Shown in pieces: positions 20,224-51,203 of a stretch of 64,000 nt of DNA (positions are counted from its first letter, which is position 1; each line of letters opens with the position of its first letter). Source of the stretch: Leucoraja ocellata (Eukaryota); NCBI GenBank assembly GCA_036785375.1, contig JAWMAR010000136.1:1550001-1614000 (forward strand), written 5' to 3'. The notes below the pieces were generated by a model. It did no database searches. It had not been told where the DNA came from and saw only the letters and a program-made list of their open reading frames with translations. The translations under genes and the position numbers were made by a program.

Positions 20224-20342
20224 TTATAAAGCGATGACGTCTATTGCTGAGCACGGTAGTCTTGGTGTTGGCCACTCAGTTCCCAGAGGCTCGTCCTCCA
20301 TGTCGCTCTGTGAAACCACTTGTGAGTAGTTCATTCCTGAGT
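20224..20342 (-). CDS. IgSF receptor, predicted terminal coding exon: (D)SGMNYSQVVSQSDMEDEPLGTEWPTPRLPCSAIDVIAL*
   Basis: ctactttgtag| acceptor, phase 1 matches the preceding exon; ITIM-like MNYSQV. Confidence 0.6.
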
Positions 20343-20581
20343 CTACAAAGTAGCTGAGAACTAATTTCAAGGTCACACAGTCCTCAAGTCTTGACGTGAA
20401 ACTCGCACCACAGAATATTCAGATGTATCATCAACATGATGGCGAGGAGATGAGCTGTAAACATACGGTAACGGTTTTTTGGCATTTTTCTCCATTGCGT
20501 CGCAAATTTGCTGAATGAACATAAAAAAGAAGAATAATCACTATCACGTGCCAAGGGCAAGTGGAATAAAACCAAGATTAC

Positions 20582-20606
20582 CGGAAATGTTTAGGTCGGG
20601 CAGTAA
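20582..20606 (-). CDS. IgSF receptor, predicted cytoplasmic micro-exon LLPDLNIS
   Basis: tttcctctatccacag|...TCCG|gtaatc; 25 nt bridges phase 0->1 exactly as required. Confidence 0.6.
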
Positions 20607-23600
20607 CTGTGGATAGAGGAAACTAACAAAATGTACCTTGTGGAATGGAAATTGAATTATCCACTCATTTGAGCCAACTAGTACTGGTTTAAATCAAAGC
20701 AGCAATTTTATATTTATGTACAATTAATATTATATTATATTTAGATTTGTGAAAAACACAGTGGTTGGCACATGAGCACAGAACTTTCCATATTATCCGT
20801 GATATTTCTGATGATTCACACATTACCTGCAAATGTCTATAAATAATGCCTGCGTGGATGTTAGCAAAGGCTATCAGAGTAATAGAAGGGTCATCTTATA
20901 ATATTTTGAAAAAGTCTTACTATTTTACAATATTTTCTAGTTTAAAAAATGATAGTAGTTGAGGGATATTTTTCAATTTTTCGGGGGTGAATGGCATTGA
21001 AAATGACTTGGATGAGAAAGTAATAAAAATGAACTGCAGATGCTGGTTTGTAACAAAGATAGACACAGAATGCTGGAGGGACTCAGCATGTCAGGCAGCA
21101 TCTCTGGAGAAAATGGATGTGATGTTTCAGGTCAGGATCCTTCTTCAGACTGATTGTATGGGGGTGGTGGGGGTGGGGAGAGCAGGAAGCAAGAAAAGAC
21201 TAAAAGACAAATCAGGGCCAGCAACAGATGACCTCGGGCAGGATGGTTCCTGATAGACCAATTGTTGGCTTGGGACAGAGTGATCCCAAAAGATGTTGCT
21301 TGATCCACCAAGTTACCCCAGCATTTTGTGGGTATCTTTAAATGAGAAAGTAGGTGGACTGATTAGTAAACTTGTTGACGACACAAAAATTAATGGAATA
21401 ATAGATAGTGACGAGGGTTGTGAAAGAAACCAGAACAACATTGATTAGTTCAAAAATTGGGCAGAGGAGTGGAAGATGGGTTTAATACAGACGGGTATTA
21501 ATGTATTTTGGAATGCCAAATACTACCAGGACATATCCGGTAAATGGCATGGAGACTATCTAATTTACTTTCAGTTAAAAATAAACAGATTTTTATTCAA
21601 ATCAGTTAAATTTGAACTGTTAGGAATGTTACGATGATTTAAGATCATTATGTGGAGAACTATATACAGGTTCTCTATTAGAAACTAGAATTAAATATGT
21701 TAGCGGCATTTAGCAGATACAATAGTCGCAGTTAGATAGGCACATGGTTTTGCATGGAATTGAGAGATATGGATGATGTGCCGGCAAGGGAGATTTGATA
21801 AACTTAACATCGTGCTTGGCAAGTACTTTGTGGGCCGACGCGCCTGTCCCTGAGCAGTACTGTTCTATGTACAAATGGAAAAATATGATCAAAATGTCGA
21901 TACTTGACTGAAGGCACTGACATCCGTTTCCACTTCAGCTCAAAACTAAATTTGGAGCATCAAAGATAAATGATGGGAAATATTCTGTGTATTCTGTAAA
22001 CCTTTACGTTAGGATGGCATAGTGGCACTGTAGTCAGTACAGCTGTCTCACAGCTCCAATGATCTGGTTCAAATCTGAACTGTGGTCTTTGACTGGGTGG
22101 AATCTGTTAATACTCCATGTGACCATGAGGATTCCTACATCTGCTCTGGTTTCTTCCCGCATCCTAAAGATATAATGTTATTGGATCCTGTGCCGTGCAT
22201 CTGACACAGTTGTGAGGTGAGTGGAGGGGGGGGGGGGGGGGGGTTAATTTACCAGAGAATAGGTTGCAGAAATTGAATGGGGTAGTGAATGATTGGATTA
22301 TGCTGAGAGCTGGCAGAGACATGATGGGTTGAATGGCCTTCATCTTTGTTTTAAGAAAATATGAAAACATTTTTTGAAGTTTGAAGGATCAGGTGCTATC
22401 TGCCAGGGAATGTGTTTAAGATCAGTACATCGATGAATATGAATATATCCGAGTCCAAGCCCAGCCATGTCTCTAACCACACAGCAAACACTCTGGACTG
22501 ACTATTTACACTTCTGTTTGTATTGTCCAACATGGCCTGTGCCTCAGTTCATCTGTTACCGATGCTTTACCACCATAGGCACTCAGGTCTCATCTCCCAC
22601 AATCTCATCCCTGTATGCCCAAAACAACTCGCTACTGAAACTCACATTTTAACTTGCACCAATTGCTGTTCAGCCATTATACACATTCTTGCTGCATACC
22701 AATAACTCTTGGTTAAGCAACGGCTGAATTTTTAAATAGTCACCTTTGTTTTGAAGCCACACCCTCTCCTCAAAGCCTCAACCTGCCCTATTCCTTTCCA
22801 TCTCTGCCAGCCCTGCAGACCACAGAGGTAGTAAAAAAAACTGCAAATGCTGGAAAACTAAAGTAAAAACAGGAACTGTGTGAGGAGGAACTGCGGATGC
22901 TAGTTCAGACCGACGATAGACACAAAAAGCTGGAGTAATTCAGTTGGACAGGCAGCATCTCTGGAGAGAAGGAATGGGTGACGTTTCGGGTCGAGACCCT
23001 TCCGTCAGTCGGTCAGGCAACATTTGAGAAAATGGAAACTGTTCTGCTTGAAAACTTTCCAATGACCCACTTTGAGGCATTTTACTGGGCTAAGGGAGCT
23101 TTGTAAAGTTGTTCTGTGGGTTACGAAGCGGGATGGTGGTGCTGCTAAAGTAATGCTACTAGTAATCAATCTTACAACCGTTCTGACATGAGGTCTCTGA
23201 CCTGAAACTTTGACGGTTTCTCTTTCCGCAGATGCTGCATGTTCTGCTGAGTATTTCCAGCATTATCTGTTTTGAACCCACATCACTATCTGCTCACATC
23301 TAACGTTTATCTAGGTTATTTTTTTCCATTAATGCCTGCTGTATTTTTCAGCTGATTAAACCGTAAGAACAATTATCCACTCACTAAATAGACAATAGAC
23401 AATAGATGCAGGAGTAGGCCATTTGGCGCTTCGAGTCAGCACCGCCATTCAATGTGATCATGGCAATCTTTTTATTTTTTATTTTTATATAAATCTTTTT
23501 GTTTTCCTACTTCACCTTCCTTAATCCGACTTCTTTGACCAAATTTGGTGATCTGTTTTAACATTATTTTGGTGTTCAGTGGAAAATCCTGTTTGATAAT

Positions 23601-24040: not shown

Positions 24041-24138
24041 CTTGGCTTTTTGGTTGTAGCGTTGTTTTGGACTGTGGATAACAATGTCCGCATAGGAGAC
24101 TTCTTCTTCACTGTTCCCTTCATTAACAAAGGCAACTT
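24041..24138 (-). CDS. IgSF receptor, cytoplasmic exon with ITIM: (E)VAFVNEGNSEEEVSYADIVIHSPKQRYNQKAK
   Basis: cttttccccacag| acceptor; VSYADI ITIM after an acidic run; AAG|gtattg donor; phase 1->0. Confidence 0.8.
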
Positions 24139-24216
24139 CTGTGGGGAAAAGAACAAACATGTGAAGCATTTATTGTAATATATGGAAGAAACTTAAGTCC
24201 CTGAATTTTATCTTAC

Positions 24217-24276
24217 CGGTTGAATACGGTCTGCTGATTGGTGGGCCATTCTTCCTGACCACTGCATATATTGTAT
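24217..24276 (-). CDS. IgSF receptor, cytoplasmic exon with ITSM: TIYAVVRKNGPPISRPYST
   Basis: tttggcag|AT...ACCG|gtaaga; 60 nt, phase 1->1; TxYxxV. Confidence 0.8.
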
Positions 24277-24773: not shown

Positions 24774-24835
24774 TGCCAATGGTTCTCACCTCTAGATACA
24801 TTTTAGAGGACATTTCAAGCTGATTCTCAATGCCC
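24774..24835 (-). CDS. IgSF receptor, predicted cytoplasmic exon (R)GIENQLEMSSKMYLEVRTIG
   Basis: cttttcatgttctcag| acceptor; only phase 2 is open; GCA|gtaagt donor gives phase 1 (an alternative donor GAG|gtgaga lies at 24790). Confidence 0.55.
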
Positions 24836-27058: not shown

Positions 27059-27061
27059 GTA

Positions 27062-28491: not shown

Positions 28492-28720
28492 TGTGGTATT
28501 ATGCAATAATAGTGTAAGGCTGAGCAGAGGGGCACTAGGACCCTGTGTGCCAGAAGCCAGGCTCCAGTAACTGGATGTGTCTGGAACCCAGGGTGTGGGC
28601 AGTTAGAGAGAGTTGCCTGGGCTTACACGAGGCTGTTGCAGTTGCTGCTGTTATTGTACAGATTAAAGATATACTCTGTTTACGTCGTGGTACGAGCCTT
28701 ATTACAAGCATAACTCGACA
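28492..28720 (+). repeat. 5' LTR
   Basis: direct repeat of 33016-33244 with one mismatch (T28572 vs C33096). Confidence 0.96.
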
Positions 28721-28817
28721 TGGTGCCAGAACTGGGAGACTTGTAAGCAAGAAAATAATTAAAGAAGAAGAGGACGGTGTATCGTTTTGGCGGGAAATAG
28801 GAGACGATCTGGCAGAT

Positions 28818-31800
28818 ATGGCGCAACTTACACCCACTGCTACGTTCACAATACAACCTCCAGAGCCATTCGATTTTACCAAGCCTCAAGAATGGGAGCG
28901 TTGGATCAGGAGATTCGACCGCTTCAGGCTTGCAAGCAATTTAAACGCGACGTCGGCAGAAAACCAGGTGAACACGTTAGTGTATTGCATGGGCGATGAA
29001 GCAGAAGATGTGCTAAAGGGGCTAACGCTAACTGCAGATGAGAGGAGGGTGTACACGGATGTCAAGGCAGGCTTTGATGCATTTTTTGTGCCTAAAAAGA
29101 ATGTGATCTATGAAAGAGCCAAGTTCAATCAGCGTGTGCAACTGCCAGGAGAAACGGTGGATTCCTTCATCACTGCTCTATACGGATTAGCCGAACACTG
29201 CAACTATGGACAGTTACAGAACGAGCTGATCCGCGACAGGTTAGTGGTTGGGCTGAGAAACGTCTCATTGTCCGAAAAGCTACAGCTAGACAGAGACCTA
29301 ACCCTTGAAACTGCTATAACAAAGACAAGGCAGTCTGAAGAAGTTAGACGACAGCGGTTTGACTTAAGAGGAGAAAATAGCGGTGCTAGCACGTGCTCAA
29401 ATGTTGATGCTGTGCATGCTAAAAGCTACAGAAAACCCAAATTTCCCTCAAAGCCTCAGCCACAAGCACAAACACCAGGCAAAAATAAATTTGATACACA
29501 GCCACAGCCAGGTTCAAAGGCCTGCTATAGATGTGGAAAAATGCCCTCGCATGGAAAATTGGAATGCCCTGCTAAAGATGCTGCGTGTCACAACTGTGGC
29601 AAAAAGGGACATTATGGCAAAGTGTGCAGAAACGGTGCTAAATCTCTCAATGCTGTCACTACAGAGGAAGAAGAGAGCTTTTTCCTGGGATCCGTGGATG
29701 CTGGAAAAGACCCGTGGACGGTGCAGCTACAAGTGAGACAAAAAAAAGTGTGCTTTAAAATAGATACTGGTGCTGATGTCACCGCCATGCCAGCGGAGGT
29801 GTACCATGACATTACAGGGGGGCATGATGTGAAGTGCCTGGCAGTGTCGACACGCCCATTGTTTGGGCCAGGGGGCAATGCACTCTCTGTCCTGGGCGTA
29901 GCCAGAGAAACACTGCGCAGAGGCAACAAGACAGCCATAGAGGACATTTATGTAGTAAAAGACCTCCACACTGCACTGTTGGGAAGACCTGCCATAGAAA
30001 GGCTTCAGCTTGTGTGCAGGGTTGACGGCATCACCTTGGAATCTGTGAGACAACAATATCCGAAGCTGTGTAGCGGCTTGGGTCTTGTTCGGAGGCCATA
30101 CTCAATTAAATTGAAGCCAGAGGCTGTGCCCTTCTCTCTCCACACGCCATGCAGAGTCCCTCTGCCGCTTATGGGAAAAGTGAAGGAGAAGATAGACCGT
30201 ATGGAAAAGATGGGCGTAATCACCAAGATTGAGGAGCCGACTGATTGGTGTGCCGGGATGGTGGTGGTGCCGAAAAAAACAGGTGATGTTCGCATTTGTG
30301 TGGACTTCACAATGATGAATGGATCAGTATGCAGAGAAAAGTTTATCCTACCTTCTGTCGAGCACACTCTGGGCATGCTAGCTGGGGCAACAGTGTTCAG
30401 CAAATTAGATGCCAACATGGGCTTTTGGCAAGTACCATTGACAAAAGAGTCTGCCAAATACACCACCTTCATCACGCCTTTTGGGCGCTACTATTTTAAC
30501 CGTCTACCCTTTGGCATAGCATCAGCCCCCGAGCACTTTCAAAGGATGATGATGACAGAAGTGACCGGTGGCCTGGAGGGGGTACTGTGTCATATGGATG
30601 ACATCCTGGTCTGGGGACAGACGCAGGAGGAGCATGATGTGCGGCTACATGCGGTGCTAGAGAAGGCACAAAAGGCCGGCATTACGCTCAACATGGACAA
30701 ATGTGAGCTCACACGCCACACAGTCAGATTCCTGGGTCATGTAATTTCAGCAGATGGAGTGAAGCCAGATCCAGAGAAGACGAGAGCAGTACAAGAGATG
30801 GATGCACCCAAAAATGTCAGCGAACTCAGGAGTTTTCTGGGCATGGTCAATCAGCTGGGCCGCTTCTTGCCAAACCTGGCTGAAAAAGACAAAGTGCTAC
30901 GAGACCTGCTGTCCAAGAAGAACCACTGGTACTGGGGGACAGAGCAGCAGGCCGCCTTTGATCAGTTAAAAACAGAGCTGTCATCCACACCAGTGCTCAC
31001 ATTATATAACCCAAACAGTGCTCTAAAGATCTCTGCTGATGCCTCTTCCTTTGGCCTGGGGGCAGTCCTGCTGCAGAAGAGCGATGCCATGTGGTCACCT
31101 GTGGCATATGCGTCCAGGGCAATGACACCAACAGAGCAGCGCTATGCTCAAGTAGAAAAGGAGGCATTGGCTGCGACGTGGGCATGTGAAAGGTTCAGCT
31201 GTTTCATCCTGGGAAGACCATTCGAGCTGGAAACTGACCACAAGCCGTTGGTGAGTCTGCTGGGAGGGAAAGCTTTGGATGACCTCCCACCAAGAATCCA
31301 AAGATTTAGGATGAGACTCATGAGGTACAGCTATACAGTAGATCATGTCCCTGGCAAAAGCCTGTGGACAGCCGACACCTTATCTCGTGCTCCTCTGAGA
31401 GCCGCAAGAACACACACAGACACAAGCCTACTAGAGGACACCAACATCTATGTAGACTCTGTCATCAGCAACATTCCTGTCAGTGGAGATTATCTGAGCA
31501 GCCTACGGGAGCACCTACAGGCAGACAGCACATGCTCTGCACTGATGGAGTACTGCACAGACGGCTGGCCCGACAAAAGCCAACTGCAGGGAGTGCTGAG
31601 ACATTACTGGGCTGATAGAGCAGTGCTGACTGTGCACGATGGGCTGCTGCTGCGGGGCACGAGGCTCGTCATCCCATCAGCCTTACAAGGTGATGTGCTG
31701 CAGAGACTACACGAAGGACACCTGGGGGTGACAAAGTGCAGGGGCCGGGCCAAACAGACGGTATGGTGGCCAGGACTCAGCAGCCAGCTGAATGACATGG

Positions 31801-32768
31801 TGCTGAAATGTAGAACCTGCATCCAAGAGCGAAGGAACGTCAAAGAGCCACTGATGCCAACGGAGATGCCAGACAGGCCTTGGCAAACCTTGGGAGCTGA
31901 CCTATTCACGCTGAAAAACAAGACTTATCTATTAGTCGTAGATTATTTCTCAAGATATGTGGAAGTTGCGCTACTATCACCCACAAGGTCCACAGATGTG
32001 GTGGTGCACCTGAAATCCATATTTGCTCGTCATGGAATTTGTGAATTTCTTAAAAGTGACAATGGGCCCCAGTTCTCAGGTAGCCACTTTAAATCCTTTG
32101 CAGCAGAGTATGGCTTTATGCACATCACGAGCAGCCGCAGGTTTCCTCAGAGCAATGGGGAGGCGGAACGCGCTGTACAAACCGTGAAAAACCTGCTAAC
32201 AAAGGCGTCAGACCCATATCTTGCATTGCTGGCCTACAGAGCAACCCCTCTACGGAACGGCTATAGCCCGGCTGAGCTGTTGATGGGGCGCCGCCTCCGC
32301 ACTACAGTTCCTGCCCTTCCAACCCTGCTGAATCCAGTTTTGCCTGACTACAACGCGCTGGGGGCCAAAGAAAGGGAGAAGAGGTGGAACGACGCAAGAT
32401 CCTTTGACAAGAGGCACGGAGCGAGAAATCTGGAGCCACTGATACCTGGGGAGGATGTGTGGATCACCGATGCACGAGTCCAGGGCAAAGTGCTATCTAC
32501 ACACAATGCACCTCGCTCTTATATCGTCCAGGTGCCTCAGGGCACACTGAGGAGGAACCGGCAGCACTTGGTGCCGCTGCAGACCAACAGTGAGGTAGTC
32601 GACGCGGATGAGCCACCGGTGGGAGAAGAGCCAGCTCCAACAGAGCCAGCTCCACCAGACCCAGCTCCACCAGTGACAGCATCTCCCAGCGGAGAGGGCC
32701 CCACCACAGAGACTGTGCGGACAAGGTGTGGGAGAGAGGTTAGAAAGCCGAAGAGACTTGATTTGTGA
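28818..32768 (+). CDS. single-ORF Gag-Pol polyprotein (~1316 aa): Gag with two Cys/His knuckles, protease (DTG), RT (HMDD), RNase H, integrase (HHCC, DDE)
   Basis: uninterrupted ORF; first in-frame ATG after the PBS (MAQLTPT); CHNCGKKGHYGKVC, KIDTGA, RLPFGIASAPEHFQ, CHMDDIL, ADAS, HEGHLG...CRTC, SDNGPQF; PR-RT-RH-IN order. Confidence 0.95.
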   Translation: MAQLTPTATFTIQPPEPFDFTKPQEWERWIRRFDRFRLASNLNATSAENQVNTLVYCMGDEAEDVLKGLTLTADERRVYTDVKAGFDAFFVPKKNVIYERAKFNQRVQLPGETVDSFITALYGLAEHCNYGQLQNELIRDRLVVGLRNVSLSEKLQLDRDLTLETAITKTRQSEEVRRQRFDLRGENSGASTCSNVDAVHAKSYRKPKFPSKPQPQAQTPGKNKFDTQPQPGSKACYRCGKMPSHGKLECPAKDAACHNCGKKGHYGKVCRNGAKSLNAVTTEEEESFFLGSVDAGKDPWTVQLQVRQKKVCFKIDTGADVTAMPAEVYHDITGGHDVKCLAVSTRPLFGPGGNALSVLGVARETLRRGNKTAIEDIYVVKDLHTALLGRPAIERLQLVCRVDGITLESVRQQYPKLCSGLGLVRRPYSIKLKPEAVPFSLHTPCRVPLPLMGKVKEKIDRMEKMGVITKIEEPTDWCAGMVVVPKKTGDVRICVDFTMMNGSVCREKFILPSVEHTLGMLAGATVFSKLDANMGFWQVPLTKESAKYTTFITPFGRYYFNRLPFGIASAPEHFQRMMMTEVTGGLEGVLCHMDDILVWGQTQEEHDVRLHAVLEKAQKAGITLNMDKCELTRHTVRFLGHVISADGVKPDPEKTRAVQEMDAPKNVSELRSFLGMVNQLGRFLPNLAEKDKVLRDLLSKKNHWYWGTEQQAAFDQLKTELSSTPVLTLYNPNSALKISADASSFGLGAVLLQKSDAMWSPVAYASRAMTPTEQRYAQVEKEALAATWACERFSCFILGRPFELETDHKPLVSLLGGKALDDLPPRIQRFRMRLMRYSYTVDHVPGKSLWTADTLSRAPLRAARTHTDTSLLEDTNIYVDSVISNIPVSGDYLSSLREHLQADSTCSALMEYCTDGWPDKSQLQGVLRHYWADRAVLTVHDGLLLRGTRLVIPSALQGDVLQRLHEGHLGVTKCRGRAKQTVWWPGLSSQLNDMVLKCRTCIQERRNVKEPLMPTEMPDRPWQTLGADLFTLKNKTYLLVVDYFSRYVEVALLSPTRSTDVVVHLKSIFARHGICEFLKSDNGPQFSGSHFKSFAAEYGFMHITSSRRFPQSNGEAERAVQTVKNLLTKASDPYLALLAYRATPLRNGYSPAELLMGRRLRTTVPALPTLLNPVLPDYNALGAKEREKRWNDARSFDKRHGARNLEPLIPGEDVWITDARVQGKVLSTHNAPRSYIVQVPQGTLRRNRQHLVPLQTNSEVVDADEPPVGEEPAPTEPAPPDPAPPVTASPSGEGPTTETVRTRCGREVRKPKRLDL

Positions 32769-33015
32769 TTTATTGATCTGTTTTCTACAATAAAGAAAAA
32801 GAGAGAGTGAAATGTGATGTGAAAATGTTCTGTAAACCTGTTACATTTACCTGAAACCTGAAAGAATAGTTCACAGTATGGTAACGTGTAAGTTATTTTA
32901 TTTCTATTTTGCATGCTTAGATCAGGGACAGGTCTTCCAGCAAAAGGGCAGAATAAACCCCTTAAGACCTGCAGAGACAAAGGTAGTCCACCCTTTGTTC
33001 TCAAAGAAAGGGAGA

Positions 33016-33244
33016 TGTGGTATTATGCAATAATAGTGTAAGGCTGAGCAGAGGGGCACTAGGACCCTGTGTGCCAGAAGCCAGGCTCCAGTAACCGGAT
33101 GTGTCTGGAACCCAGGGTGTGGGCAGTTAGAGAGAGTTGCCTGGGCTTACACGAGGCTGTTGCAGTTGCTGCTGTTATTGTACAGATTAAAGATATACTC
33201 TGTTTACGTCGTGGTACGAGCCTTATTACAAGCATAACTCGACA
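33016..33244 (+). repeat. 3' LTR
   Basis: direct repeat of 28492-28720. Confidence 0.96.
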
Positions 33245-34308: not shown

Positions 34309-34352
34309 CTAACTCCTTGTTGCAGTTTTCATCCCTGTGCATGTTTTCAGGA
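34309..34352 (-). CDS. IgSF receptor, predicted cytoplasmic exon (H)PENMHRDENCNKEL
   Basis: tcttttttatttctatctgttcaag|...TAG|gtatgt; 44 nt, phase 2->1. Confidence 0.6.
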
Positions 34353-35714: not shown

Positions 35715-38327
35715 CTGGGGAAAGGGAAAGAAAACATGTATTTGACAATCGAATGCTAATTTCAACACATAGCTTGTCAGTTGTGATTATTAGATCAGTC
35801 ACCCTGAGGTATCATTAGCATTGGCTTTTTGCTCCCTCAGTAGAAAGCATCACTTTGGTAACACTTTGTCAGAAGGCTGTGGGCTTGCATCCTACTCTGG
35901 AGACGTTCAACACGAAGGGCAATGTCAACCTGCATCTTCCACAGTTGTAATTAATTCAGTACTAGTTTGCTCACTCGCTTCTCGTTAAAATTGGGAAATC
36001 CAGATTCCATTCTGATAAAGTTACACAGATTCACATCTCAGGATGAATTGTGTATATTATTGACGATGAACAATATTTGTTACTTTAGACTACCAACGTT
36101 GTGCCATGTGATTAACTGCTCTCTGGGCTGTAATGATATCCAGAGTGAATTCCAGAGAGGAATTCCTTGAGAAACCCTTGAATCAAAAGTTTGCACCTTG
36201 GTCTTCTTGTGCACCGAGAGTATTTGTCCGTATATTCTGCAAATGGACTTTGTTGGGCATAAAGAATCAATAACGATCTTGTACGTCGCAGAGGGCAATT
36301 TAGGAGTGTTCCGCAAAACTGCCCATTGTACTTCTGCAGATCAGTCATCAATGCAAGTATATAACTGAGGTATAACTTTCGGATAAGACTGTGGATGGTT
36401 CGATTGTAATCACGTATTGTGTTTCCGCTGACTGGTTAGCAGGCAACATGAGCTTTTCACTGTACCTCGGTACACATGATAATAAACAATAAACTAAGCT
36501 GCTACCTCAATGGCCTCTAGATCTAAAAATCCGTATCCAATAACTTTTTGGATTACTCCTATAACATGATTGAAACAATAGAATGAATACGTAATCCCAA
36601 CTTTCTTGGAGCTTTTCACTGAAGAAAGTTCTCTGTTCTAGGTTATTCAGATCGAAAACAAAGGCTTTATCGTAGTATGCATCGAAAGCCATTTGCCAGT
36701 TTCAAGGTATAATAATCTCCAACACAGGTGCTCATGCAGCTAGGCTGAATATTGGGAACAATCACTAAAACAAAAATGAAGCCAACAAACTGAAAACAAT
36801 ATTCAACCAGACCTATATTTTAAATTATTAAAATATTAGGTTCAAATGTATTTTAATTACCATAGTAATCATATTTTAGCTTTACAGTCCATCTTTTCCA
36901 TCGCTTTTTTTTAAAACGTTCTGTTTATTACCAGAATGCATTTTGTCAATAGAGCATCAATTTGTTACAATTCCTACTAAAGGCTGCTTTAGACCACAAT
37001 AATATAACCATGCTTCTAAAAATAGTCTTCACTGCTATCCTGCTAGACGATTGTGCTTGATAATAGCTTTCGTGTATCATAAAGTATCTGTTCATGAAGC
37101 CCGGGTCTCTTGACTCATTGCTGGGGTCACTGTCTTAACTGACTCAAATCCATGCGTCCTCTCTGTTTGACTGAATATGTAGATGTGGAGCATCACATGG
37201 GTTCAGCAAACACGGAGAAACACTTGCACAGTTGAATTGTCACAAAACGACTCCTACAACTCATTGTAGCTGAGTCTTCGCTGGTTTAAGAGGGAAGTGA
37301 AACCAGGATATGATGGTTGACTACACCCATGAAGGTATTATAAAATTATGAAGACAATAGATAAGATGTAATCAAAAATGAATTAATTTGAAAGTACTTT
37401 TCCCTAGAGACTTATCCGGCCGTCTTTCATGCTTTGGTTGTAACTAGAATAATATACTCGGAGAATTCAGGAGTTTTCATTTAATGAACATGTTAAGAAC
37501 CATAATACTGTGGCCAATTCTCTGACAAACCTATTGCACCCAAACTTGGGAGTGTCATAAACATGTTGTATAGATTATGCAGCAAACAGCTACAATGATT
37601 TAATGTTCTTAATTTAAAGAGATTAAGTAAAGTAAGTATAATTTCACACAGAACAAAATAATGCATGATTATATGTTCTTTAGTCCACCAGAAGGCTGTT
37701 TGACAAGTTATTATTATTTCGATGCACTGCCAGGAAATGGTACGATTATTCATTGTAGTACAAAATGTTGAAAGGCACTTCACAATATCAGTAAGCAATT
37801 AGCCCAACAAGCAGAGGTGATTGCTCAGAGAGTGAGTAATGTTTCTCCCATCTTCAGAACCTAACGCAAACTAGAACAAGTATTCCACCCAAGCAACTTT
37901 GTTAACTACAGTATCTGTTTGTATTGACAGTCACTCAGCTGCCCTCTGCTTCCCACATCAGCCTTTCTACTGTATCTTGGGTCCTTCCAAGTCCAGTCCA
38001 GCAGAATTCTCAGTGTAAAAACAAGGGATTGCAGATGTTGGTTTACACAAAAGGACACAAAGTGCTGGAGTAACTCACAGGAATGCTTAAGACAAACCAA
38101 GACACTCATCCAATAACACTTATGGTGTCAATGATAGTGAACACACAGAACACACAGCAAATATGTACATGGATAGAAAAGGTTTAGAGAGCCAAACATG
38201 GGCAGGTGGGACTTGTGAAGATGGAGCATCTTGGTTAGCATGGGCAAGTTGGGCCGAAGGGTCTGTTTCCATGCTGCATGACTCTTTAACACTTTAAAAT
38301 AGGATTACCAAATCTTTAATGCTGTCT

Positions 38328-39647: not shown

Positions 39648-42541
39648 TTAAAATATAAATTGCACACTATGCAAAGGATTTCTCTGATTGTATATCTCAC
39701 TCCAAACCCAAAATGTTATGATATTTTATTTATAGTTGAGATAAAATGATTAAAATTTAAAAATAGACAATTTGTAGTGAACTACTATTTTTTATTGTGG
39801 TCACCAGAGCTATACAAAAGGCACATCCAGCTGCATACCACACAATGCTCTCACTTACAAATGCTGCAGTTAACCACATTGTACAACTGCAGCTCCAAAC
39901 CAGGCCAAGCATAAGAACTGCAAGCGTAAAGCCACTGTCCCTTCCAATCTTTGCAAATTTCCTTTTTACTTTGGCTTCTTGTAACAGTTCACTGCACAAG
40001 CAAGCTGAAATGCGATTTCTTGTATGAAGGCTGCTATTGTTCCATCCACTTTTTATTTCCTCTGTTCTTTGACAAGAACAACTTAGAGCGTAGAACACTG
40101 GGACTTTTCAAATCCTGCCCTATTACACCATTTAATCTCTTTAAGATGGAAGAAATGATGTATCAATGGACCAATGCTATATTTCTGTGATTAAAATCCA
40201 ATTTATTTGCTTCAGTGACTAGCAGGAAAAGCCAAAATCTGAATTAGCAGGATTACTTTAATCATAATTTCAAGATATTTTAAAATTCAAATCAATAACA
40301 AATATTTGTAAATTGTTTTATTCATTTTTTAATTGCTACATAATTTTCTTTTATTTAAAATTTGGGACCTAGAATGCATGTAGGATTTTGATACTCAGCT
40401 ATTTTTTAATAATTGATTTTTCACTGAGTATCATCATTATTGGTGTAGAAATGCGACTTGATTTTTCAGTGCAAAATGGGTAGTATAGCATGAGATCTTC
40501 CCCAAACCAACCAAGATAATCTGGCCAATATTCAGTATATGTGTAGCTGATACATTAGCTCCCTTTTGTTTTGCTATTTCAGTGCAATTTTCTACTTTTG
40601 CATGTAAATAGTGTCAGATTTGCTGATTTAAAACCTGTTGTGGCCATCCACTGGCTGTTAGTCAAATTGCCCTCCAAATAAACAATACAACAAACCATAA
40701 AGGGTGGAACAGATAAGGTCATTGCCAGAGAATACAGGTTTTTACTAAATCCTAGTTGAGTAAGGAAACTCATCCAATGAGGAATGCAGAGCAGAAAGAT
40801 GAAACCCAGTCAAGAAAACCATACCATTTTCAGGGAGAAATGCGAAAAGCCAAAATCTGGACCATCCTGTCAAAGATTGGAAAGTAAACCTGCTTTGATT
40901 TAGAGTAAGGACAATACAATGGCAGGCGATCTTTTGTCTTCTCTGAAGGCATTTATTAAACTCAGTTTATATTCACTTTTTGTAGGTGCAAGATATTGTA
41001 AATTTTAAAAGAAAATACTGCAACTGGATAAGCAGTGCTTGTTCATGTGTTCATAAGTGAAAGGAGCAGAATTAGGCCAGTCTACCATTCAATCATGGCT
41101 GATTCATCTAACCCCATGCTTCCTAACCCCATTCTCCTGCCTTCTTCCAATAACTCCTGACACCCATACTAATCAACAATCTATCTATCTCTGCCTTAAA
41201 AATATCCACTGACCCGGCCTCCACAGTGCTCTGTGGGAATAAATTCCGCAGATTCACCACGCGCTGACAAATGAAATTTCTCCTCATCTCCTTCCTAAAG
41301 GACCATCCTTTAATTCTGAGGCTATAACCTCTAGTCCTAGATTCTCCCACTAGTGGACACCTCCTCTCCACATCCACTCTATCCAGGCCCAAGTCAAACT
41401 TGCAGCTATGAACAGCATTTCCAAAATACATATGCTAAATATTCTCTCTTGCACGTTGCCCAGAATGGATTAGCATCGATAGATTCCTTCCCACATCAAG
41501 GTGGATGTATTTTGGACCCAATTTCCTCTAACCTTGGCCTGGTTTTGTAAAGCAGCATTTCATTTTTTCAGAAATCTGCGTGTTTAAATTTTCAGATCTA
41601 TAGTTGTGGTGAAGTAATACTGTACATTTATGTTGAAACGATCTGGGTGATGAGAAATGTGGAGAACGAGTGGTCAGAACACATCACGCTTTGGTTAACA
41701 AAGGCCTGTACATTGCACTCTAAATGTGCTGCAGTGGAAGGCAAGGCATTCCGCTGTCTTGAGGATTTTTTTTTTGGGTGATTCCAATGCACTCTTGAAC
41801 AGGAAATGCATGGGGGATGGTGTATTTAGCCTTGAGTGAAGCAAGTGAAAAGAAGTAGCAAAGCAGTGACAATAAAGAAACGCCAGTGATAAGTCACAGC
41901 AGGAAAAATATTCCAATGGCATTGATGGCATTCAAGCTTCAATTTCACATATTCATTTAATAAGCTGGGGGACAGATAAACTGTCACGCAGCCTAATATC
42001 GAGAATCATATATAACTTGAAAAAGTCCAATCAAATCCAATCAACCCAATTAAATCAAATTGACTCCACATTATCCAGTCTCACTGTTGTATTATCAGTC
42101 TGAAGAAGGGTCTTGGCCCGAAACGTCGCCTATGCATTCTCTCCATAGATGCTGCCTCACCTGCTGAGTTTCTTCAGCTTTTTTGTCTACCTGCTGTATT
42201 TAAAGGTCTCTTTTTTCCAAACAACTAAATTATTTTCAAAGTCATCATAAACTGTTAATAGCAAACAGAGAATTAGACCTTTTTTTCTAAATTTACTCTC
42301 AATGAATTTCACTTCAAAACTTTCTTGCTGCTCCCCTTGTGAAATGTTATGTCACTCTCTCATAATTCAACTTGCCCTTTCATCCTTTTAACCGTTGCAG
42401 AGTTGACTAAATAAAAGGGCTTTTCCTTTCCAGCCTCTTAATGAACAATTCCACGTCCTGGTGGCTTTGTGGAGAATTCATGCTGCACTTTTTCCAGAAA
42501 TGAATTTCCTCTACAGAATTCCTCCCTAACTTCAGTAGGTC
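39648..42541. repeat. copy 1 of a ~3-kb direct duplication (in the IgSF post-TM intron)
   Basis: colinear similarity with 59602-62883, including a shared CR1 fragment (about 41110-41388 vs 61610-61880). Confidence 0.92.
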
Positions 42542-44016: not shown

Positions 44017-44115
44017 CTTTCCGTTGCCTCTTGCAGTTCAGACAAACATATATTATTGCCAAAATCATGGCAGTAGTTAGGGGGATCAGGACCAGAGCAT
44101 AAAGAAAAGGATAAT
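44017..44115 (-). CDS. IgSF receptor, transmembrane exon (D)YPFLYALVLIPLTTAMILAIIYVCLNCKRQRK
   Basis: ttttctttcacag|...AAAG|gtaaaa; 99 nt, phase 1->1; uncharged TM followed by a basic stop-transfer sequence. Confidence 0.92.
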
Positions 44116-45108: not shown

Positions 45109-45426
45109 CTTTCCGTTTTGTGTTTATCGAGATACTTCTGTTTCTCCAGCCGTAGTCGTTTTTTGCCATGCACCAATACATTCCTTCATCTTTATGCTGG
45201 AAACGTGTCCATTCTTTTGAACTGTTGAACCCGACTCCAGTTTGCAACGTTACATTATGATTCTCCGTGGCATTTGTCCAGAAAACAGTGGGCACCGGAT
45301 TACTGTCTACGCGACAATTCAGTTCCAGAAATGAATCAGCAGCAACAAAGATGATGCTATCATTGATCAGTCGAAAAGTATCCACTGCTTTCAACCTGTA
45401 TGTTATTAATAGATCTTGTGGTCCAT
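45109..45426 (-). CDS. IgSF receptor, Ig domain 3 (C2/I-set)
   Basis: accgttag|AT...AAAG|gtaaat; 318 nt, phase 1->1; YGP linker, LNCRVDSNP..VFW...DEGMYWCMAKNDYG. Confidence 0.93.
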
Positions 45427-46792: not shown

Positions 46793-47083
46793 ACATAATA
46801 TTTAGTTTGATCGTATTTACAGCTGGCCGTCCAAAAACGGAATGATTAATCTGACAACTGCAAACAGTTCCATTGTCTTCCACTCTTGGGACAATCTTGT
46901 AATGACTGGTGGCAACTAGTGTGCCATTCCTGTGTGTTTCAAAAGTTGGTGCAGTGATATTTGTAGAAGTGCATGTCCATGTAAAGGAGATATCCTTGTC
47001 ATACAATCCCTTGCCAGTGCAGGTTAGAGTGGATTCATGACCAGCAACCAAAGTATCACTCCGTATATACATTTCTGGAAGAT
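46793..47083 (-). CDS. IgSF receptor, Ig domain 2 (C1-like / CD80-type C2)
   Basis: cttctctcag|AT...ATGT|gtaagt; 291 nt, phase 1->1; LTCTGKGLYDKDISFTW...NGTL..TS...EDNGTVCSCQINHS. Confidence 0.93.
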
Positions 47084-48930: not shown

Positions 48931-50050
48931 CACACGACCCCAATCCTCCCACGACAATGGAACACCATGGACTTGTTTGTTTTACTTATTGTGTTTTACA
49001 GTCTTCTTCCATTTTTTAGTCTTGTAGAATTTTATGTGATTAAATGTGATTATGTAATAAATTTACTTATAATTTATGTTTCTGTGTGCAGATTTTTGCT
49101 GCACCTGTACCTCACCGTTCTTGTGCCAATGACAGTAAACAGCTTGACTTGGCTAAGCTCTGTTTCCATTAATTCTTAGTACAAGAAGTGAACTCCCCTT
49201 AAAATGTTCCCTTCCATGCACCATCCCCATCTACCCACCATTGCTCACTCAAGATTCAAGATTCAAGATTCAATTTTAATTGTCATTGTCAGTGTACAGT
49301 ACAGAGACAACGAAATGCATTTAGCATCTCCTTTGAAGAGCGACATAGCAAACTCTGGGAAAGAGCTGCCAATTGCTATCCATTTCAATTCGCTTTTCCA
49401 TTCCCATACTGACCTGTCATCCCTTCCTCATTGGCAGATTGAGATCTATCACAAACTGAATCCTAACTGAATGCAGTCAATTAAACTATCTCAAAGAGTT
49501 ATTTTTTTAACTGTTGTAAAACCAGCTCATCCTTTGGTATGGATAGAATAGAACGTGAAAAGAAAGAAAAATGGAGCAATATTGTCACTGTTGGTATTCA
49601 TATACGATTTAAGATCAAATGAGACAACGCAACAGAATCACAAGCCGTGTATTACTAAAAAAAGCTGGAAACACCAACCTTGAAGTACCTCTGTGAAACA
49701 CAGAACTGCAGATTCTGGTTTACAAAAGAAAGAGTGCTGGAGTAACTCAGCGGGTCAGTCAACGTCTCAGGGGAACATGGTCTGAAGAAGGTCTAGACCA
49801 GATATGTTCTCCTGGAATGCTGCCTGACCCATTGAATTGCTCCAGCCCTTTGTGTGGTCATATGCCTTATTAATTTAGGTTGATCCAAAATGTGTTCATG
49901 TCATCTGATTTCTAATTGGGTCTGCTTGGTATTATGTCTGTTAAAGTATCTGTAAATGGCTTGGTTCAAATGTCACTGCGTTTAACATTATTGATTTCAT
50001 AAACATAAAGTGGCGAGACTGGAGATCATCATAGTATTACAATACTTTAC

Positions 50051-50398
50051 CATAAACCTGTATTCGTGTTCCTTGGCCCTTTTCATGAATTGGAGGGAAG
50101 ACATTTGGTACATTCACCGCACAAATGTAGTCGTAAAAAGAGTGACCAACCGATACATTTTCAATCTTCAGTGATACTGTACAGTTGTTGAAACCACGCC
50201 AGAGTGGGTGAGGAATGCAGAGCAAGTTGTTCGTGTTGCAAGTAACATCAGGCTCTCCAGGCGATGTCCGATACCATGAACCGCGGAGCCAGGCATTCAC
50301 ACTTCCATTATAACTAAACGTACAGTTTAACGTGACGGACTCGCCTCTGCACACCTTGACCAGACGTGGCTGGATCAAATTTGTGATTAGCGGAACTC
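50051..50398 (-). CDS. IgSF receptor, V-set domain with J-like G strand (KGQGTRIQV) and six cysteines
   Basis: ttttccaccag|GA...TATG|gtaaag; 348 nt, phase 1->1; GESVTLNCTF, WY, SLKIENV, YIC. Confidence 0.94.
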
Positions 50399-51154
50399 CT
50401 GGTGGAAAATAAATACATTTGTCAATGATACTCCCGTTAGTAGTTCAATAAACATCCACTTTACACACTGAACGAGGGATTGGGTTTCTAACGGAAACAA
50501 TACTTAAAAGAAACGCATTCAAATCTGACGTTTTCAAACAACGATTCTCGTTTCCATGATGGTTGCAAATGCGTTCTCTCAGCAGATTCGGTGGCAGGTG
50601 GCACCGTGATATTTGGACGCTAGAAAAGACACAAGTGGCTGGAGTAACTCGGCGGGTCAGGAAGCATCTCAGGAGCACATGGATGAGATGATTTTTTAAA
50701 GTCTGGAAAAGGGTCCCGACCCGAAACGCCTCCTATCCATGTTCTCCAGGGATGCTGCCTGCCTGACCCGCTGAGTTGCTCCAGCACTCTGTGTCTTCAC
50801 TTGCAAACCAGAATCTGCTGTTCTTCGTTTCTACACCTTCGTAAGATTCTTGCTTTGTGCTCTCTGATGGAGTTGTAGTGACCGAATTATATCTCAAATG
50901 TTTTAACTATTTGAATCTTTGCAGGCAATCGTAGTCAATGAAGATGCAAAACTTTTATTCCAACATTAAAAATATAGATTAAACGGAGACTAAATATTGT
51001 GAAGGGTTTCTCGGCCTTTGAGCAGAGATATTAATCGACTTGCTGTTTTAATAACAGACTCGGTCCTGAACTACCTATCGATGCAATATGCCACATACTG
51101 AAGATCCTCATCACGGCTCCTTGGTCCACAGATTGTCCGATCAACATAACTTGC

Positions 51155-51203
51155 CTTGTGTTCCTGCATGCAGGATGAAAAGCAGCTTCAGGAGGAGTTG
51201 CAT
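51155..51203 (-). CDS. IgSF receptor, exon 1 signal peptide MQLLLKLLFILHAGTQ(G)
   Basis: hydrophobic leader; AAG|GCAAGT GC-type donor in phase 1, in frame with the V exon. Confidence 0.85.

What the first reader, a model, noticed from the sequence alone, without database searches (positions are those of the whole stretch)
20224..51203. Unassigned inhibitory IgSF receptor: germline-joined VJ + C1-like + C2, TM, ITSM/ITIM tail
Seen: exons with canonical splice sites and compatible phases give a ~530-aa type I protein. The architecture is leader - V (ending GQGTRIQV) - C1-like - C2/I - uncharged TM - ~165-aa tail with TIYAVV, VSYADI and MNYSQV. Known: a GxGT J-like strand fused to V in one exon occurs in non-rearranging relatives of antigen receptors (SIRP, NITR, NKp30); V-C1-C2 ectodomains typify nectin/CADM/CD96; ITIM+ITSM tails recruit SHP-1/2 as in PD-1, BTLA and Siglecs. 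Inference: this mix fits none of these families cleanly (no Siglec F-strand Arg; third domain is not C1 as in SIRP). It may be a lineage-specific checkpoint receptor of cartilaginous fish, relevant to antigen-receptor origins.
Basis: partly seen in the sequence, partly recalled or inferred. Interest (0 to 1): 0.85.

Follow-up and report, generated by a model that had tools for sequence, protein, structure and literature searches.

The report
Inhibitory VJ-C1 receptor gene of skates
A real skate gene for a cell-surface immunoglobulin-type receptor with a tail built to switch cells off; it belongs to an old, unstudied fish family that databases label inconsistently, mostly as "Siglec".

Summary
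The gene is real and lies on the minus strand. It encodes leader, VJ-type V domain, C1-set domain, I-set/C2 domain, uncharged TM helix and a tyrosine-motif tail.

Three details of the finding are wrong.
- MNYSQV lies in the 3'UTR. The real third motif is SEYSVV, and the protein ends ...RTV.
- The product is about 466-490 aa, not about 530 aa.
- The intron 1 donor is GC, not GT.

This copy has also lost the acceptor of a 24-codon juxtamembrane exon (E5b). The tail is kept only if that exon is skipped.

The family is not new to databases. Profile search found 18 proteins from 16 chondrichthyan species, including a chimaera. NCBI auto-names them Siglec-6/8/12/13/14, and other members carry MAG-like or sialoadhesin-like names. 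Collinear relatives at 26-30% identity exist in paddlefish (named SIRP-alpha-like), arowana and bonefish, so the family is not limited to cartilaginous fish.

It fails the Siglec hallmarks and the SIRP and UrIg third-domain test. It shows no specific sequence link to nectins. Seven paper searches found no description of it.

The most likely function is an SHP-1/2-recruiting inhibitory receptor whose V domain diverges fast among skates.

The scan also noted a like architecture 20.6 kb beyond this window (s1-900026) and on another piece of this genome (s1-884582). I tested neither.

The parts
51155..51278 (-). Exon 1: 5'UTR (at least 75 nt) and leader MQLLLKLLFILHAGTQ, plus 1 nt. ATG at 51203. 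GC donor (AAG|GCAAGT), phase 1.
   Evidence: The Logan transcript protein P0053 reads through the same 24 upstream codons and the leader (16 of 16 identical), then joins ...TQ-G-VPLI.
50051..50398 (-). Exon 2: V-set domain with a J-like GQGTRIQVY in the same exon. Canonical Cys...Trp...YxC, an extra conserved Cys pair, and 4 N-glycosylation sequons.
   Evidence: Pfam V-set 4.3e-9. PDB best hits are lambda V domains, with the J motif aligned. G124, G126 and T127 are invariant in 13 of 13 family members. Sequons and Cys.
46793..47083 (-). Exon 3: C1-set domain (...VCSCQINHSVF...), phase 1 to 1.
   Evidence: Pfam C1-set 30 bits against a cutoff of 21; C2-set_2 only 15.9 bits. PDB hits are IgA/IgG constant domains, and SIRP-gamma at 2.5e-4.
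45109..45426 (-). Exon 4: I-set/C2-type domain. Acceptor TTAG|AT; the split codon gives Tyr before GPQDLLITYRL...
   Evidence: Pfam Ig_3 6e-10 and I-set 9e-7. PDB hits are neurofascin, contactin, Robo and MAG. The orthologue junction ...NIM-Y-GPQ appears.
44017..44115 (-). Exon 5: uncharged TM helix (YPFLYALVLIPLTTAMILAIIYVCLNC) followed by KRQRK, phase 1 to 1.
   Evidence: The hydropathy scan found this as the only uncharged 21-residue stretch scoring at least 2.2 between 20000 and 45110. Sequence. It matches P0039 and P0053 in 31 of 32 residues.
34309..34383 (-). Damaged juxtamembrane exon E5b. The 3' part, SPENMHRDENCNKEL plus donor GTATGT, is kept. The 5' part is T-rich and diverged, and TG stands where the phase-1 AG acceptor is expected. 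The only AG nearby (AAG at 34355-34353) gives a frameshift to a stop at the exon's end.
   Evidence: Orthologues read DPVNVTIELSPENMHRDANCNKEL here.
24217..24276 (-). Exon 6: TIYAVVRKNGPPISRPYST, matching the ITSM consensus TxYxx(V/I). Phase 1 to 1.
   Evidence: It is 19 of 19 identical to P0039, P0051, P0053 and P0054. D393, Y396, A397 and V399 are invariant in 13 of 13. Motif definitions come from PMC12151841 (passages).
24041..24138 (-). Exon 7: ...EEEVSYADIVIHSPK..., matching the ITIM consensus (S/I/V/L)xYxx(I/V/L). Phase 1 to 0.
   Evidence: It is 32 of 32 identical to four skate proteins. E424-I433 is invariant in 13 of 13.
19665..20510 (-). Exon 8. The CDS runs 20510-20373 (QICDAMEKNAKKPLPYVYSSSPRHHVDDTSEYSVVRVSRQDLRTV, then the stop) and holds a third ITIM-type motif, SEYSVV. 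The 3'UTR is about 0.7 kb. The 3' end near 19665 is inferred from ATTAAA at 19686 and from read depth.
   Evidence: for the CDS. for the RNA: depth 2-4 over 19900-20499, about 0.1 in 20500-20699, X1 contigs at 20254-20420 and 19735-19895, and zero depth in 19500-19699.
20317..20334 (-). It is not coding and lies in the 3'UTR, in another frame.
37970..38011 (-). Intronic pseudo-exon ENSAGLDLEGPKIQ*. It is homologous to the terminal exon of the short-tailed paralogue P0001 of Rhinoraja. Here CTG stands where a phase-1 acceptor would be.
   Evidence: tblastn hit with 11 of 14 identical. DNA.
28492..33244 (+). LTR retrotransposon inside intron 5, on the opposite strand. It has a 1407-aa gag-pol-type ORF (28545-32768), and its LTRs are 228 of 229 identical.
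39648..42541 (.). Stretch of intron 5 that is duplicated at 59602-62883 with 85-92% identity. The copy probably belongs to the neighbouring paralogue.
   Evidence: Scan note s1-885321.

Best explanation
The locus encodes a type I membrane protein of the immunoglobulin superfamily. Its parts are a signal peptide, a V domain with a built-in J-like strand, a C1-set domain, an I-set/C2-type domain, an uncharged transmembrane helix and a cytoplasmic tail. The tail carries three conserved tyrosine motifs: TIYAVV (ITSM type), VSYADI (ITIM) and SEYSVV (ITIM type). It ends in ...RTV.

It is the skate member of an old, low-copy family found in sharks, rays and a chimaera, with more distant collinear relatives in early-branching ray-finned fishes.

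Inferred mechanism: the membrane-distal V domain binds a ligand, probably a protein. Src-type kinases then phosphorylate the tail tyrosines, and the tandem-SH2 phosphatases SHP-1/SHP-2 dock on the ITSM/ITIM pair and damp activation signals. This is how SIRP-alpha, PD-1, PECAM-1 and inhibitory Siglecs work.

What is shown: gene structure, domain types, motif conservation, and transcripts of near-identical genes that join TM to tail.
What is inferred: ligand binding, phosphorylation, SHP recruitment and inhibitory output.

In this genome copy the 24-codon exon between the TM exon and the ITSM exon has lost its acceptor. The inhibitory tail is made only if that exon is skipped, which keeps the frame and gives 466 aa.
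For: - Exons, phases and splice sites.
- Domain types above Pfam gathering scores.
- V exon search: 38 hits at E<=1e-3 in 1.84 billion representatives, and the six best are full-length family members.
- 13 of 13 hits and 18 of 18 hits are chondrichthyan proteins with the same architecture.
- Logan transcript proteins P0053 (contig 2326 nt) and P0054 join TM, E5b, E6, E7 and E8 in one frame. Outside the V domain they match the window in 95-100% of the residues of each exon, except the 15-residue E5b remnant (13 of 15).
- The tail tyrosine blocks are invariant or nearly so in 13 sequences and are kept in Callorhinchus.
- The motifs fit the ITIM and ITSM definitions and the SHP-2 SH2 preferences quoted in PMC12151841 (passages).
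- RNA reads cover the last exon and 3'UTR, with a drop at about 20510, and give low depth confined to the bins that hold E6 and E7.
- V-domain differences among close skates are enriched over the rest of the protein: 14/115 against 9/360 for P0039, Fisher p=1.3e-4; for P0051 and P0053 p=5.5e-5 and 2e-3.
Against: - I saw no read or contig of this very locus that joins TM to tail. The one read-laying run showed no E6-E7 or E7-E8 joint: depth was about 1, and 457 joints were not listed.
- E5b cannot be included in frame here. A cryptic AAG acceptor behind a strong pyrimidine tract would instead give a stop codon and a tail-less or NMD-prone product.
- Strand bias in the two stranded libraries is opposite (X9 against X13), so the RNA strand is not assigned.
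- The tissue of expression is unknown.
- The order ITSM-ITIM-ITIM is not the usual ITIM-then-ITSM order (the usual order is recalled, not from a call).
- SHP binding, the ligand and the inhibitory effect are untested.
Confidence: 0.7

Rival explanations
1. It is a true Siglec, as NCBI's automatic names say: a sialic-acid-binding lectin of the CD33-related type with an inhibitory tail.
For: - 15 of the 18 hits carry a Siglec name.
- The family profile matches Siglec-8 (7quh) at 6.6e-19 and MAG at 9.5e-19 over the second half of D2 plus D3.
- The tail has an ITIM plus a distal ITIM-like motif.
Against: - The V domain has the canonical B-F cysteine pair and Trp.
- No Arg is invariant on the F or G strand in 13 sequences. 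The residues after the F-strand Cys are A/E/V/I, then V/A/L, then K/N/R.
- D2 is C1-set, not C2-set.
- The V and C1 exons give no Siglec among their best 60 PDB hits.
- The Siglec-8 score is no better than those of contactin, Robo or DSCAM.
- Names are inconsistent: MAG-like, sialoadhesin-like, SIRP-alpha-like, VCAM1-like.
- The Siglec hallmarks used here are recalled, not taken from a call.
Confidence: 0.06
2. It is the fish counterpart (co-orthologue) of the tetrapod SIRP family: a VJ-C1 receptor with a polymorphic V domain and an SHP-recruiting tail, in which the third domain was replaced or diverged.
For: - SIRP-gamma is the only receptor outside the antibodies among the best 60 PDB hits of the window's C1 exon (2.5e-4).
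- For the V-C1 part of the paddlefish homologue, SIRP-alpha (2wng) ranks 11th of 7182 at 2.1e-15. It and UrIg2 are the only entries in the best 60 whose names are not antibody or immunoglobulin chains.
- NCBI names the paddlefish protein SIRP-alpha-like.
- An 'SHPS1' cluster is among the structure neighbours, TM 0.58.
- The V domain is the fast-changing part.
Against: - D3 is I-set/Ig_3, not C1.
- No SIRP appears among the 38 V-exon hits or in the region search.
- The SIRP-gamma hit falls on that protein's third domain, so it is not collinear with the window's D2.
- No synteny test was possible.
- PMC13262535 lists the SIRP family under Tetrapoda (table passage).
- The tail has three motifs, not the four tyrosines I recall for SIRP-alpha.
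Confidence: 0.2
3. It is chiefly an adhesion molecule of the nectin/CADM type (V, C1-like, C2/I), anchored to a PDZ scaffold by its C-terminal ...RT(V/A). The tyrosine motifs only modulate this role.
For: - The domain order is the same as in nectins and CADMs.
- Atlas structure neighbours of the V-C1 part are nectin-3-like (TM 0.64), nectin-4 (0.62) and CADM1 (0.60).
- The C-terminus is conserved...RTV or ...RTA in 9 of the 13 A1 sequences...RTF in one more, and three divergent ends.
Against: - No nectin or CADM appears among the best 60 PDB sequence hits for the V exon, the C1 exon or the whole profile.
- D2 scores as C1-set over the CD80-like C2-set_2 model typical of nectins: 30 against 15.9 bits in the window, 65 against 29.8 bits in paddlefish.
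- TM-scores near 0.6 are shared with B7-H6 and SHPS1.
- The most conserved tail blocks are the ITSM and ITIM, not the C-terminus.
Confidence: 0.12
4. This particular copy is a null or decaying allele or paralogue. The lost E5b acceptor leads to use of the cryptic AAG site, then a frameshift and a stop, so no inhibitory tail is made from this locus.
For: - TG stands where the AG is expected, the 5' third of the exon has diverged, and no phase-1 AG lies in the open frame.
- The cryptic acceptor follows a long pyrimidine tract.
- One V-domain Cys (in ...DVTC...) is absent from the five other skate V domains aligned.
- RNA depth is low.
Against: - All eight other exons keep open frames and good splice sites.
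- Tail exons are 96 of 96 identical to P0053 and P0054 at the protein level. That is unexpected for a long-dead tail.
- Skipping E5b keeps the frame.
- Reads do cover E6, E7 and E8.
Confidence: 0.25

Closest known systems
SIRP family (SIRP-alpha/SHPS-1, beta, gamma)
   Same: Both have a non-rearranging V domain with a J-like strand followed by a C1-set domain. Both have a type I TM and a tail with several ITIM-type tyrosines that recruit SHP-1/2 (the SIRP side is recalled). The V domain is the variable part. SIRP is the best-ranking solved cell-surface receptor for the family's C1 and V-C1.
   Different: The third domain is I-set/C2-type, not C1. The tail has three motifs in the order ITSM-ITIM-ITIM. 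There is no detectable V-domain similarity. The family is found in cartilaginous and early ray-finned fish, whereas PMC13262535 places SIRPs at Tetrapoda.
CD33-related Siglecs, CD22 and MAG (the label NCBI gives)
   Same: The membrane-proximal I/C2-type domain scores like those of Siglec-8 and MAG. The tail has an ITIM plus a distal ITIM-like motif.
   Different: The V domain has the canonical disulfide, no conserved F-strand Arg and a J-like GxGT motif. D2 is C1-set.
Nectin, PVR and CADM adhesion receptors
   Same: Both have the three-domain order V, C1-like, C2/I. They are the nearest predicted-structure neighbours of the V-C1 part, at TM 0.60-0.64.
   Different: No sequence-level hit appears in the best 60 for any domain. 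The tail is built of ITSM and ITIM motifs. The C-terminus is ...RT(V/A), not the afadin or 4.1/PDZ motifs that I recall for nectins and CADMs.
UrIg and UrIg2, the non-rearranging VJ genes of elasmobranchs (Flajnik et al. 2025, PMC12227049; abstract and section 7 read)
   Same: Both have a single-exon VJ domain followed by a C1 domain, do not rearrange and occur in elasmobranchs. UrIg2 (9dmx) is the 4th best PDB hit for the V-C1 part of the paddlefish homologue, at 8.1e-19.
   Different: UrIg2 has nine C1-type domains after the VJ domain, and the number and types of its C domains vary between sharks and batoids. The paper holds no occurrence of ITIM, SIRP, Siglec or nectin. This family has one C1, then an I-set domain and an ITSM/ITIM tail. 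9dmx is absent from the best 60 hits of the window's own V and C1 exons.
NITRs of bony fish (recalled, no call)
   Same: Both have a germline-joined VJ-type V domain on a TM receptor, often with ITIMs.
   Different: NITRs have V or V+I ectodomains without a C1 domain, and they form large multigene clusters. This family has 1-2 genes per species in the lists.

Membership tests
Siglec | N-terminal V-set domain with an essential, conserved Arg on the F strand (definition recalled) | tested here: not met
   In alignment A1 (13 sequences), no invariant or nearly invariant Arg lies between Y107/C109 and G124. The residue right after the F-strand Cys is A, E, V or I.
Siglec | Unusual V-set disulfides: an intrasheet pair and a link to domain 2 instead of the canonical B-F pair (definition recalled) | tested here: not met
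   The canonical C42...W58...Y107-x-C109 is invariant in 13 of 13, and so is an extra pair, C77/C89.
Siglec | All domains after the V domain are C2-set | tested here: not met
   D2 hits Pfam C1-set above its gathering score: window 30 bits, P0039 25 bits, paddlefish P0056 65 bits.
Siglec | Tail with an ITIM and a distal ITIM-like motif | tested here: met
   VSYADI and SEYSVV.
SIRP | V (J-like) - C1 - C1 ectodomain | tested here: not met
   D1 is V-set with GxGT and D2 is C1-set, so both fit. D3 is Ig_3/I-set with no C1-set hit.
SIRP | Specific sequence kinship with SIRP domains | tested here: inconclusive
   SIRP-gamma scores 2.5e-4 with the window's C1 exon. SIRP-alpha ranks 11th of 7182 for the paddlefish V-C1 part. 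No SIRP appears among the 38 V-exon hits. No phylogeny with reference sequences could be built.
SIRP | Binds CD47; syntenic with the SIRP cluster | not testable with these tools
No annotated vertebrate genome was on hand.
Nectin/CADM | V - C1-like - C2/I ectodomain | tested here: met
   Structure neighbours at TM 0.60-0.64.
Nectin/CADM | Sequence kinship, and the family's C-terminal scaffold-binding motif (motif recalled) | tested here: not met
   No nectin or CADM appears in the best 60 PDB hits. The C-terminus is ...RTV.
UrIg/UrIg2 | VJ exon followed only by C1-type domains (PMC12227049, section 7) | tested here: not met
   The third domain is I-set. 9dmx is not in the best 60 for the window's exons.
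UrIg/UrIg2 | Linkage to the MHC or to the antigen-receptor complex | not tested
   Only 64 kb was on hand. I did not identify the neighbouring genes.
ITIM/ITSM inhibitory receptors (functional class) | Cytoplasmic (S/I/V/L)xYxx(I/V/L) and TxYxx(V/I) motifs (PMC12151841, passages) | tested here: met
   TIYAVV, VSYADI and SEYSVV. Y396 and Y428 are invariant and Y477 is present in at least 90% of 13 sequences. All three motifs are kept in Callorhinchus.
ITIM/ITSM inhibitory receptors (functional class) | Phosphorylation-dependent SHP-1/SHP-2 recruitment and inhibition | not testable with these tools
   This needs bench work.

The most novel reading that the evidence does not exclude
This is an un-named, ancient gnathostome receptor family: VJ, C1, I-set, then an ITSM/ITIM tail. 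It is retained in cartilaginous and early ray-finned fishes and lost or unrecognisable in tetrapods. It would be the sister or fish-side counterpart of SIRPs. That would move the origin of the 'VJ-C1 ectodomain plus SHP-recruiting tail' checkpoint design from tetrapods to the root of jawed vertebrates, and add a third non-rearranging VJ-C1 lineage beside UrIg and UrIg2.
Probability: 0.3. Interest if true: 0.65.

Novelty: new variant of a known kind. Interest (0 to 1): 0.45.

Why it matters
Non-rearranging receptors that keep a joined VJ domain next to a C1 domain are the closest living models of the gene the RAG transposon invaded. Few are known in cartilaginous fish.

This family adds one with a clear signalling tail, conserved from chimaera to skate and present in early ray-finned fish. 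It also shows that the 'Siglec-12/13/14' labels in at least 16 chondrichthyan genome annotations are probably wrong. That matters for anyone counting Siglecs or SIRPs across vertebrates.

Its fast-changing V domain and its short-tailed neighbour in skates suggest a ligand under selection. None of this is very surprising to a comparative immunologist, and the function remains untested.

Tried and rejected
1. My first model put the exon 4 acceptor at a tandem AG pair (45388/45385) and joined TM directly to the TIYAVV exon, giving about 454 aa. I rejected the acceptor once homologues showed the ...NIM-Y-GPQDLL junction at 45427/45426.

2. I looked for paralogous exons inside the window. tblastn of the seven exon peptides found only the exons themselves. 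The only duplicated part is intronic.

3. The pseudo-exon at 38011-37970 was considered as an alternative short-tail end. It lacks a phase-1 AG here, so I did not include it.

4. RNA support for the joints: the one read-laying run was flooded by repeats at 20900-21299, 22900-23099, 23300-23499 and 23700-23899. It listed no joint of the gene.

5. To reach named reference families I ran the search for homologous proteins on P0039 residues 18-229. It returned 6 hits among 117 candidates, all from the family itself. The profile search at E<=1e-15 hid weaker named families, so a looser cut would have been wiser.

6. The Atlas search gave only V-C1 look-alikes at TM 0.5-0.7 from several families. 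It is not decisive.

7. The search of earlier findings by words was blank.

8. The seven paper searches that ran found no paper on this family. UrIg/UrIg2 (PMC12227049) is a different gene family.

Table S1 and figs S1-S2 of PMC12227049, and the family tables of PMC13262535, may list related VJ genes that I could not see.

Full report
WHAT IS THERE.
The window has no N. The gene lies on the minus strand. I read eight good exons.
- E1, 51203-51155: ATG, leader MQLLLKLLFILHAGTQ, phase 1.
- E2, 50398-50051: V domain ending in GQGTRIQVY.
- E3, 47083-46793.
- E4, 45426-45109.
- E5, 44115-44017: the TM exon.
- E6, 24276-24217: TIYAVV.
- E7, 24138-24041: VSYADI, ending in phase 0.
- E8, from 20510: phase 0, stop at 20375-20373.

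All acceptors are AG. All donors are GT except E1, which has AAG|GCAAGT. E1 to E6 end in phase 1, as is usual for Ig-superfamily genes.

Pfam calls E2 V-set (4.3e-9), E3 C1-set (6.5e-7, 30 bits against a cutoff of 21) and E4 Ig_3/I-set (6e-10 and 9e-7). The TM stretch is the only uncharged 21-residue window with mean hydropathy of at least 2.2 between 20000 and 45110 on that strand.

CORRECTIONS TO THE FINDING.
- E7 ends in phase 0. The strong acceptor at 20511/20510 is also phase 0 and opens ...KKPLPYVYSSSPRHHVDDTSEYSVVRVSRQDLRTV*.
- Orthologues end the same way.
- A contig of run X1 crosses 20254-20420 without a splice. Depth falls from 3.2 (20300-20499) to about 0.1 (20500-20699) in X9.
- The real third motif is therefore SEYSVV.

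HOMOLOGUES AND TRANSCRIPT SUPPORT.
I searched exon by exon and left out the joined step. I built and submitted no spliced protein of this window.
- V exon search. Against 1.84 billion representatives it gave 38 hits at E<=1e-3. The six best (1.6e-50 to 3.4e-23) are proteins of 243-494 aa, and in five of them the match starts 18-20 residues from the N-terminus, just after a leader.
- Family searches. With P0001 as query, 13 of 13 hits were elasmobranch proteins. A 13-sequence profile (A1) gave 18 hits at E<=1e-15, all chondrichthyan, from 16 species. They include Callorhinchus milii at 37% identity and full coverage.
- The 90% cluster of P0039 holds XP_055516779.1 (Leucoraja erinacea, 490 aa), two Amblyraja radiata models and three Logan products.
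- P0053 comes from a 2326-nt contig. It reads through 24 codons upstream of the ATG exactly as the window does. It then joins leader, V, C1, D3, TM, a 24-codon exon (E5b), E6, E7 and E8 in one frame.
- Per exon, the window matches P0053 in 16/16 (leader), 105/115 (V), 95/96, 102/105, 31/32, 19/19, 32/32 and 45/45 residues.
- So transcripts of a near-identical gene do join the TM exon to the ITSM/ITIM exons, and they also support the GC-donor junction. I could not show this for the window's own copy.

RNA READS.
One call laid X1 (contigs) and three raw RNA runs on 19300-25299.
- Apart from heavy repeat signal, depth was 2-4 over 19900-20499, about 1 in the two bins that hold E6 and E7, and 0 to 0.2 in the intron bins 24300-25299.
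- No joint of the gene was listed, and 457 joints were not shown.
- Strand bias was clear in both stranded libraries but in opposite senses. X9 summed to 10.0 against 1.1 over three bins, first mate on minus. X13 summed to 3.1 against 0, first mate on plus. The strand therefore cannot be assigned from these data.
- X1 contigs differ from the window at 0 of 161 and 1 of 167 positions. That run is therefore of the same or a very close species.

A LESION IN THIS COPY.
- Orthologues carry E5b between TM and E6. It reads DPVNVTIELSPENMHRDANCNKEL in P0039.
- In the window only SPENMHRDENCNKEL plus the donor is kept (34354-34309).
- Upstream, the frame reads DFVFFISICS, and TG stands where the phase-1 AG should be. 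No other phase-1 AG lies in the open frame.
- The one AG nearby (AAG, 34355-34353) follows a long pyrimidine tract. With the phase-1 TM exon it would give VLKTCTGMKTATRS and a stop.
- Skipping E5b keeps the frame.
- Which of these happens is the main open point for this locus.

WHAT FAMILY.
- Solved-structure sequences, single exons. The V exon is nearest to lambda light-chain V domains, with its GQGT aligned to the J motif (5.7e-6 and weaker). The C1 exon is nearest to IgA/IgG constant domains, and SIRP-gamma is the only receptor outside the antibodies in its best 60 (2.5e-4). D3 is a generic I-set domain, matching neurofascin, contactin, Robo and MAG.
- Family profile. It aligns V-C1 (positions 23-218) end to end with light chains (7.7e-14). 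It hits Siglec-8 at 6.6e-19 only over late D2 plus D3, no better than contactins.
- Paddlefish homologue. For its V-C1 part, UrIg2 (9dmx) ranks 4th and SIRP-alpha (2wng) 11th of 7182.
- Atlas. Structure neighbours of V-C1 are an unnamed C1-set cluster (TM 0.73), nectin-3/4 (0.62-0.64), CADM1 and B7-H6 (0.60), and SHPS1 (0.58).
- Siglec hallmarks, as I recall them, are not met. The V domain has the canonical Cys-Trp-Cys triad and no conserved F-strand Arg, and D2 is C1-set.
- SIRP and UrIg fail on the third domain.
- Nectin/CADM matches only in domain order.

DISTRIBUTION, NAMES AND LITERATURE.
- Automatic names disagree. They include Siglec-6/8/12/13/14, MAG-like (Rhincodon, Stegostoma), sialoadhesin-like (Pristiophorus), SIRP-alpha-like and 'HMCN2' (Polyodon), VCAM1-like (Scleropages) and hypothetical (Albula, Chiloscyllium).
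- P0039 aligns collinearly with three ray-finned fish proteins. The alignments cover V, C1 and D3 for paddlefish P0056 (30%, 1e-48), V through TM for arowana P0021 (28%, 4e-37), and V into the tail for bonefish P0035 (26%, 2e-32). In the last, DVTYAV and LVYADI fall on the skate motifs.
- Species show one or two genes in these lists. Rhinoraja pairs a ~490-aa form with a shorter, tail-less one on the same contig (P0055/P0001), and Amblyraja pairs a 488-aa form with a shorter model that ends inside the TM (P0051/P0050).
- Seven full-text searches found no paper on the family.
- PMC12227049 (abstract and section 7 read) describes UrIg/UrIg2, VJ genes followed by C1 domains only. It has no mention of ITIM, SIRP, Siglec or nectin.
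- PMC13262535 (passages) lists the SIRP and Siglec families under Tetrapoda.

HOW IT MOST LIKELY WORKS.
- Shown: a glycosylated three-domain ectodomain with 13 sequons, an uncharged TM helix and a tail whose three tyrosine blocks are among its most conserved parts. D393, Y396, A397, V399 and E424-I433 are invariant in 13 of 13, and Y477 is present in at least 90%.
- The motifs fit the ITSM and ITIM definitions and the SHP-2 SH2 preferences quoted in PMC12151841. Y396 and Y428 lie 32 residues apart in P0039.
- Inferred: ligand binding by the V domain, tyrosine phosphorylation, docking of SHP-1/2 and inhibition.
- Among close skates the V domain carries most of the differences: 14/115 against 9/360 residues for P0039, with p from 5.5e-5 to 2e-3 across the three comparisons. 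They cluster in the C-C' region, around the F strand and just before the J motif. This fits a ligand-facing surface under selection, but I could not compute dN/dS because I had no homologue DNA.

VERDICT AND LIMITS.
The interpretation 'fits no known family cleanly' holds. 'Unassigned' and 'cartilaginous-fish specific' do not. I rate it a new variant of a known kind: an inhibitory IgSF receptor with a VJ-C1 core.

Structure prediction and the look-up of encoding contigs were closed, so I had no model, no fold search and no synteny. Supplements were closed. The Siglec, SIRP, nectin and NITR hallmarks not tied to a call are from my own knowledge.

Noticed in passing
window 28492-33244 (+): An LTR retrotransposon sits inside intron 5, antisense to the gene. 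It has a 1407-aa uninterrupted gag-pol-type ORF with protease, RT and integrase-like stretches by eye. Its LTRs are 228 of 229 identical, so the insertion looks very recent.
   Followed up: partly
window 39648-42541 and 59602-62883: About 3 kb of intron 5 is duplicated upstream of the gene at 85-92% identity. No copy of any exon lies in 51500-64000. The copy probably belongs to the post-TM intron of a neighbouring paralogue whose TM exon lies beyond the window (scan notes s1-885321, s1-900026).
   Followed up: partly
window 37970-38011 (-): An intronic stretch reads ENSAGLDLEGPKIQ* and matches the terminal exon of the short-tailed Rhinoraja paralogue P0001 (380 aa). Rhinoraja pairs a long-tailed and a tail-less gene on one contig. 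The short form has no charged TM residue, so it looks like a decoy rather than a classic activating partner.
   Followed up: partly
window 20376-20384 (-); alignment A1 C-termini: The C-terminus is ...RTV or ...RTA in 9 of the 13 A1 sequences and ...RTF in one more. The pattern fits a class I PDZ-ligand (pattern recalled). No partner is known.
   Followed up: no
window 20145: A 3-nt deletion relative to the window appears in 4 of 4 RNA reads of run X9 in the 3'UTR. It is probably a polymorphism.
   Followed up: no
window 38319-38615 (+): A tandem array in intron 5 reads LVEWAGQWE several times in one frame, so its unit is about 27 nt. I saw it only in the ORF list.
   Followed up: no
window 26711-27038, 41119-41388, 44478-44950, 60834-61033, 61611-61880: Copies of one interspersed repeat (its ORFs read ...RGDLIETYKILKGLDRLD...) are scattered through the introns. 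Several other repeats (20900-21299, 22900-23099, 23300-23499, 23700-23899) are very abundant in all four RNA runs.
   Followed up: no
protein P0040 (Hemiscyllium ocellatum, 610 aa): This family member has two consecutive, near-identical VJ domains before the C1 domain, so the V exon was duplicated in the epaulette shark.
   Followed up: no
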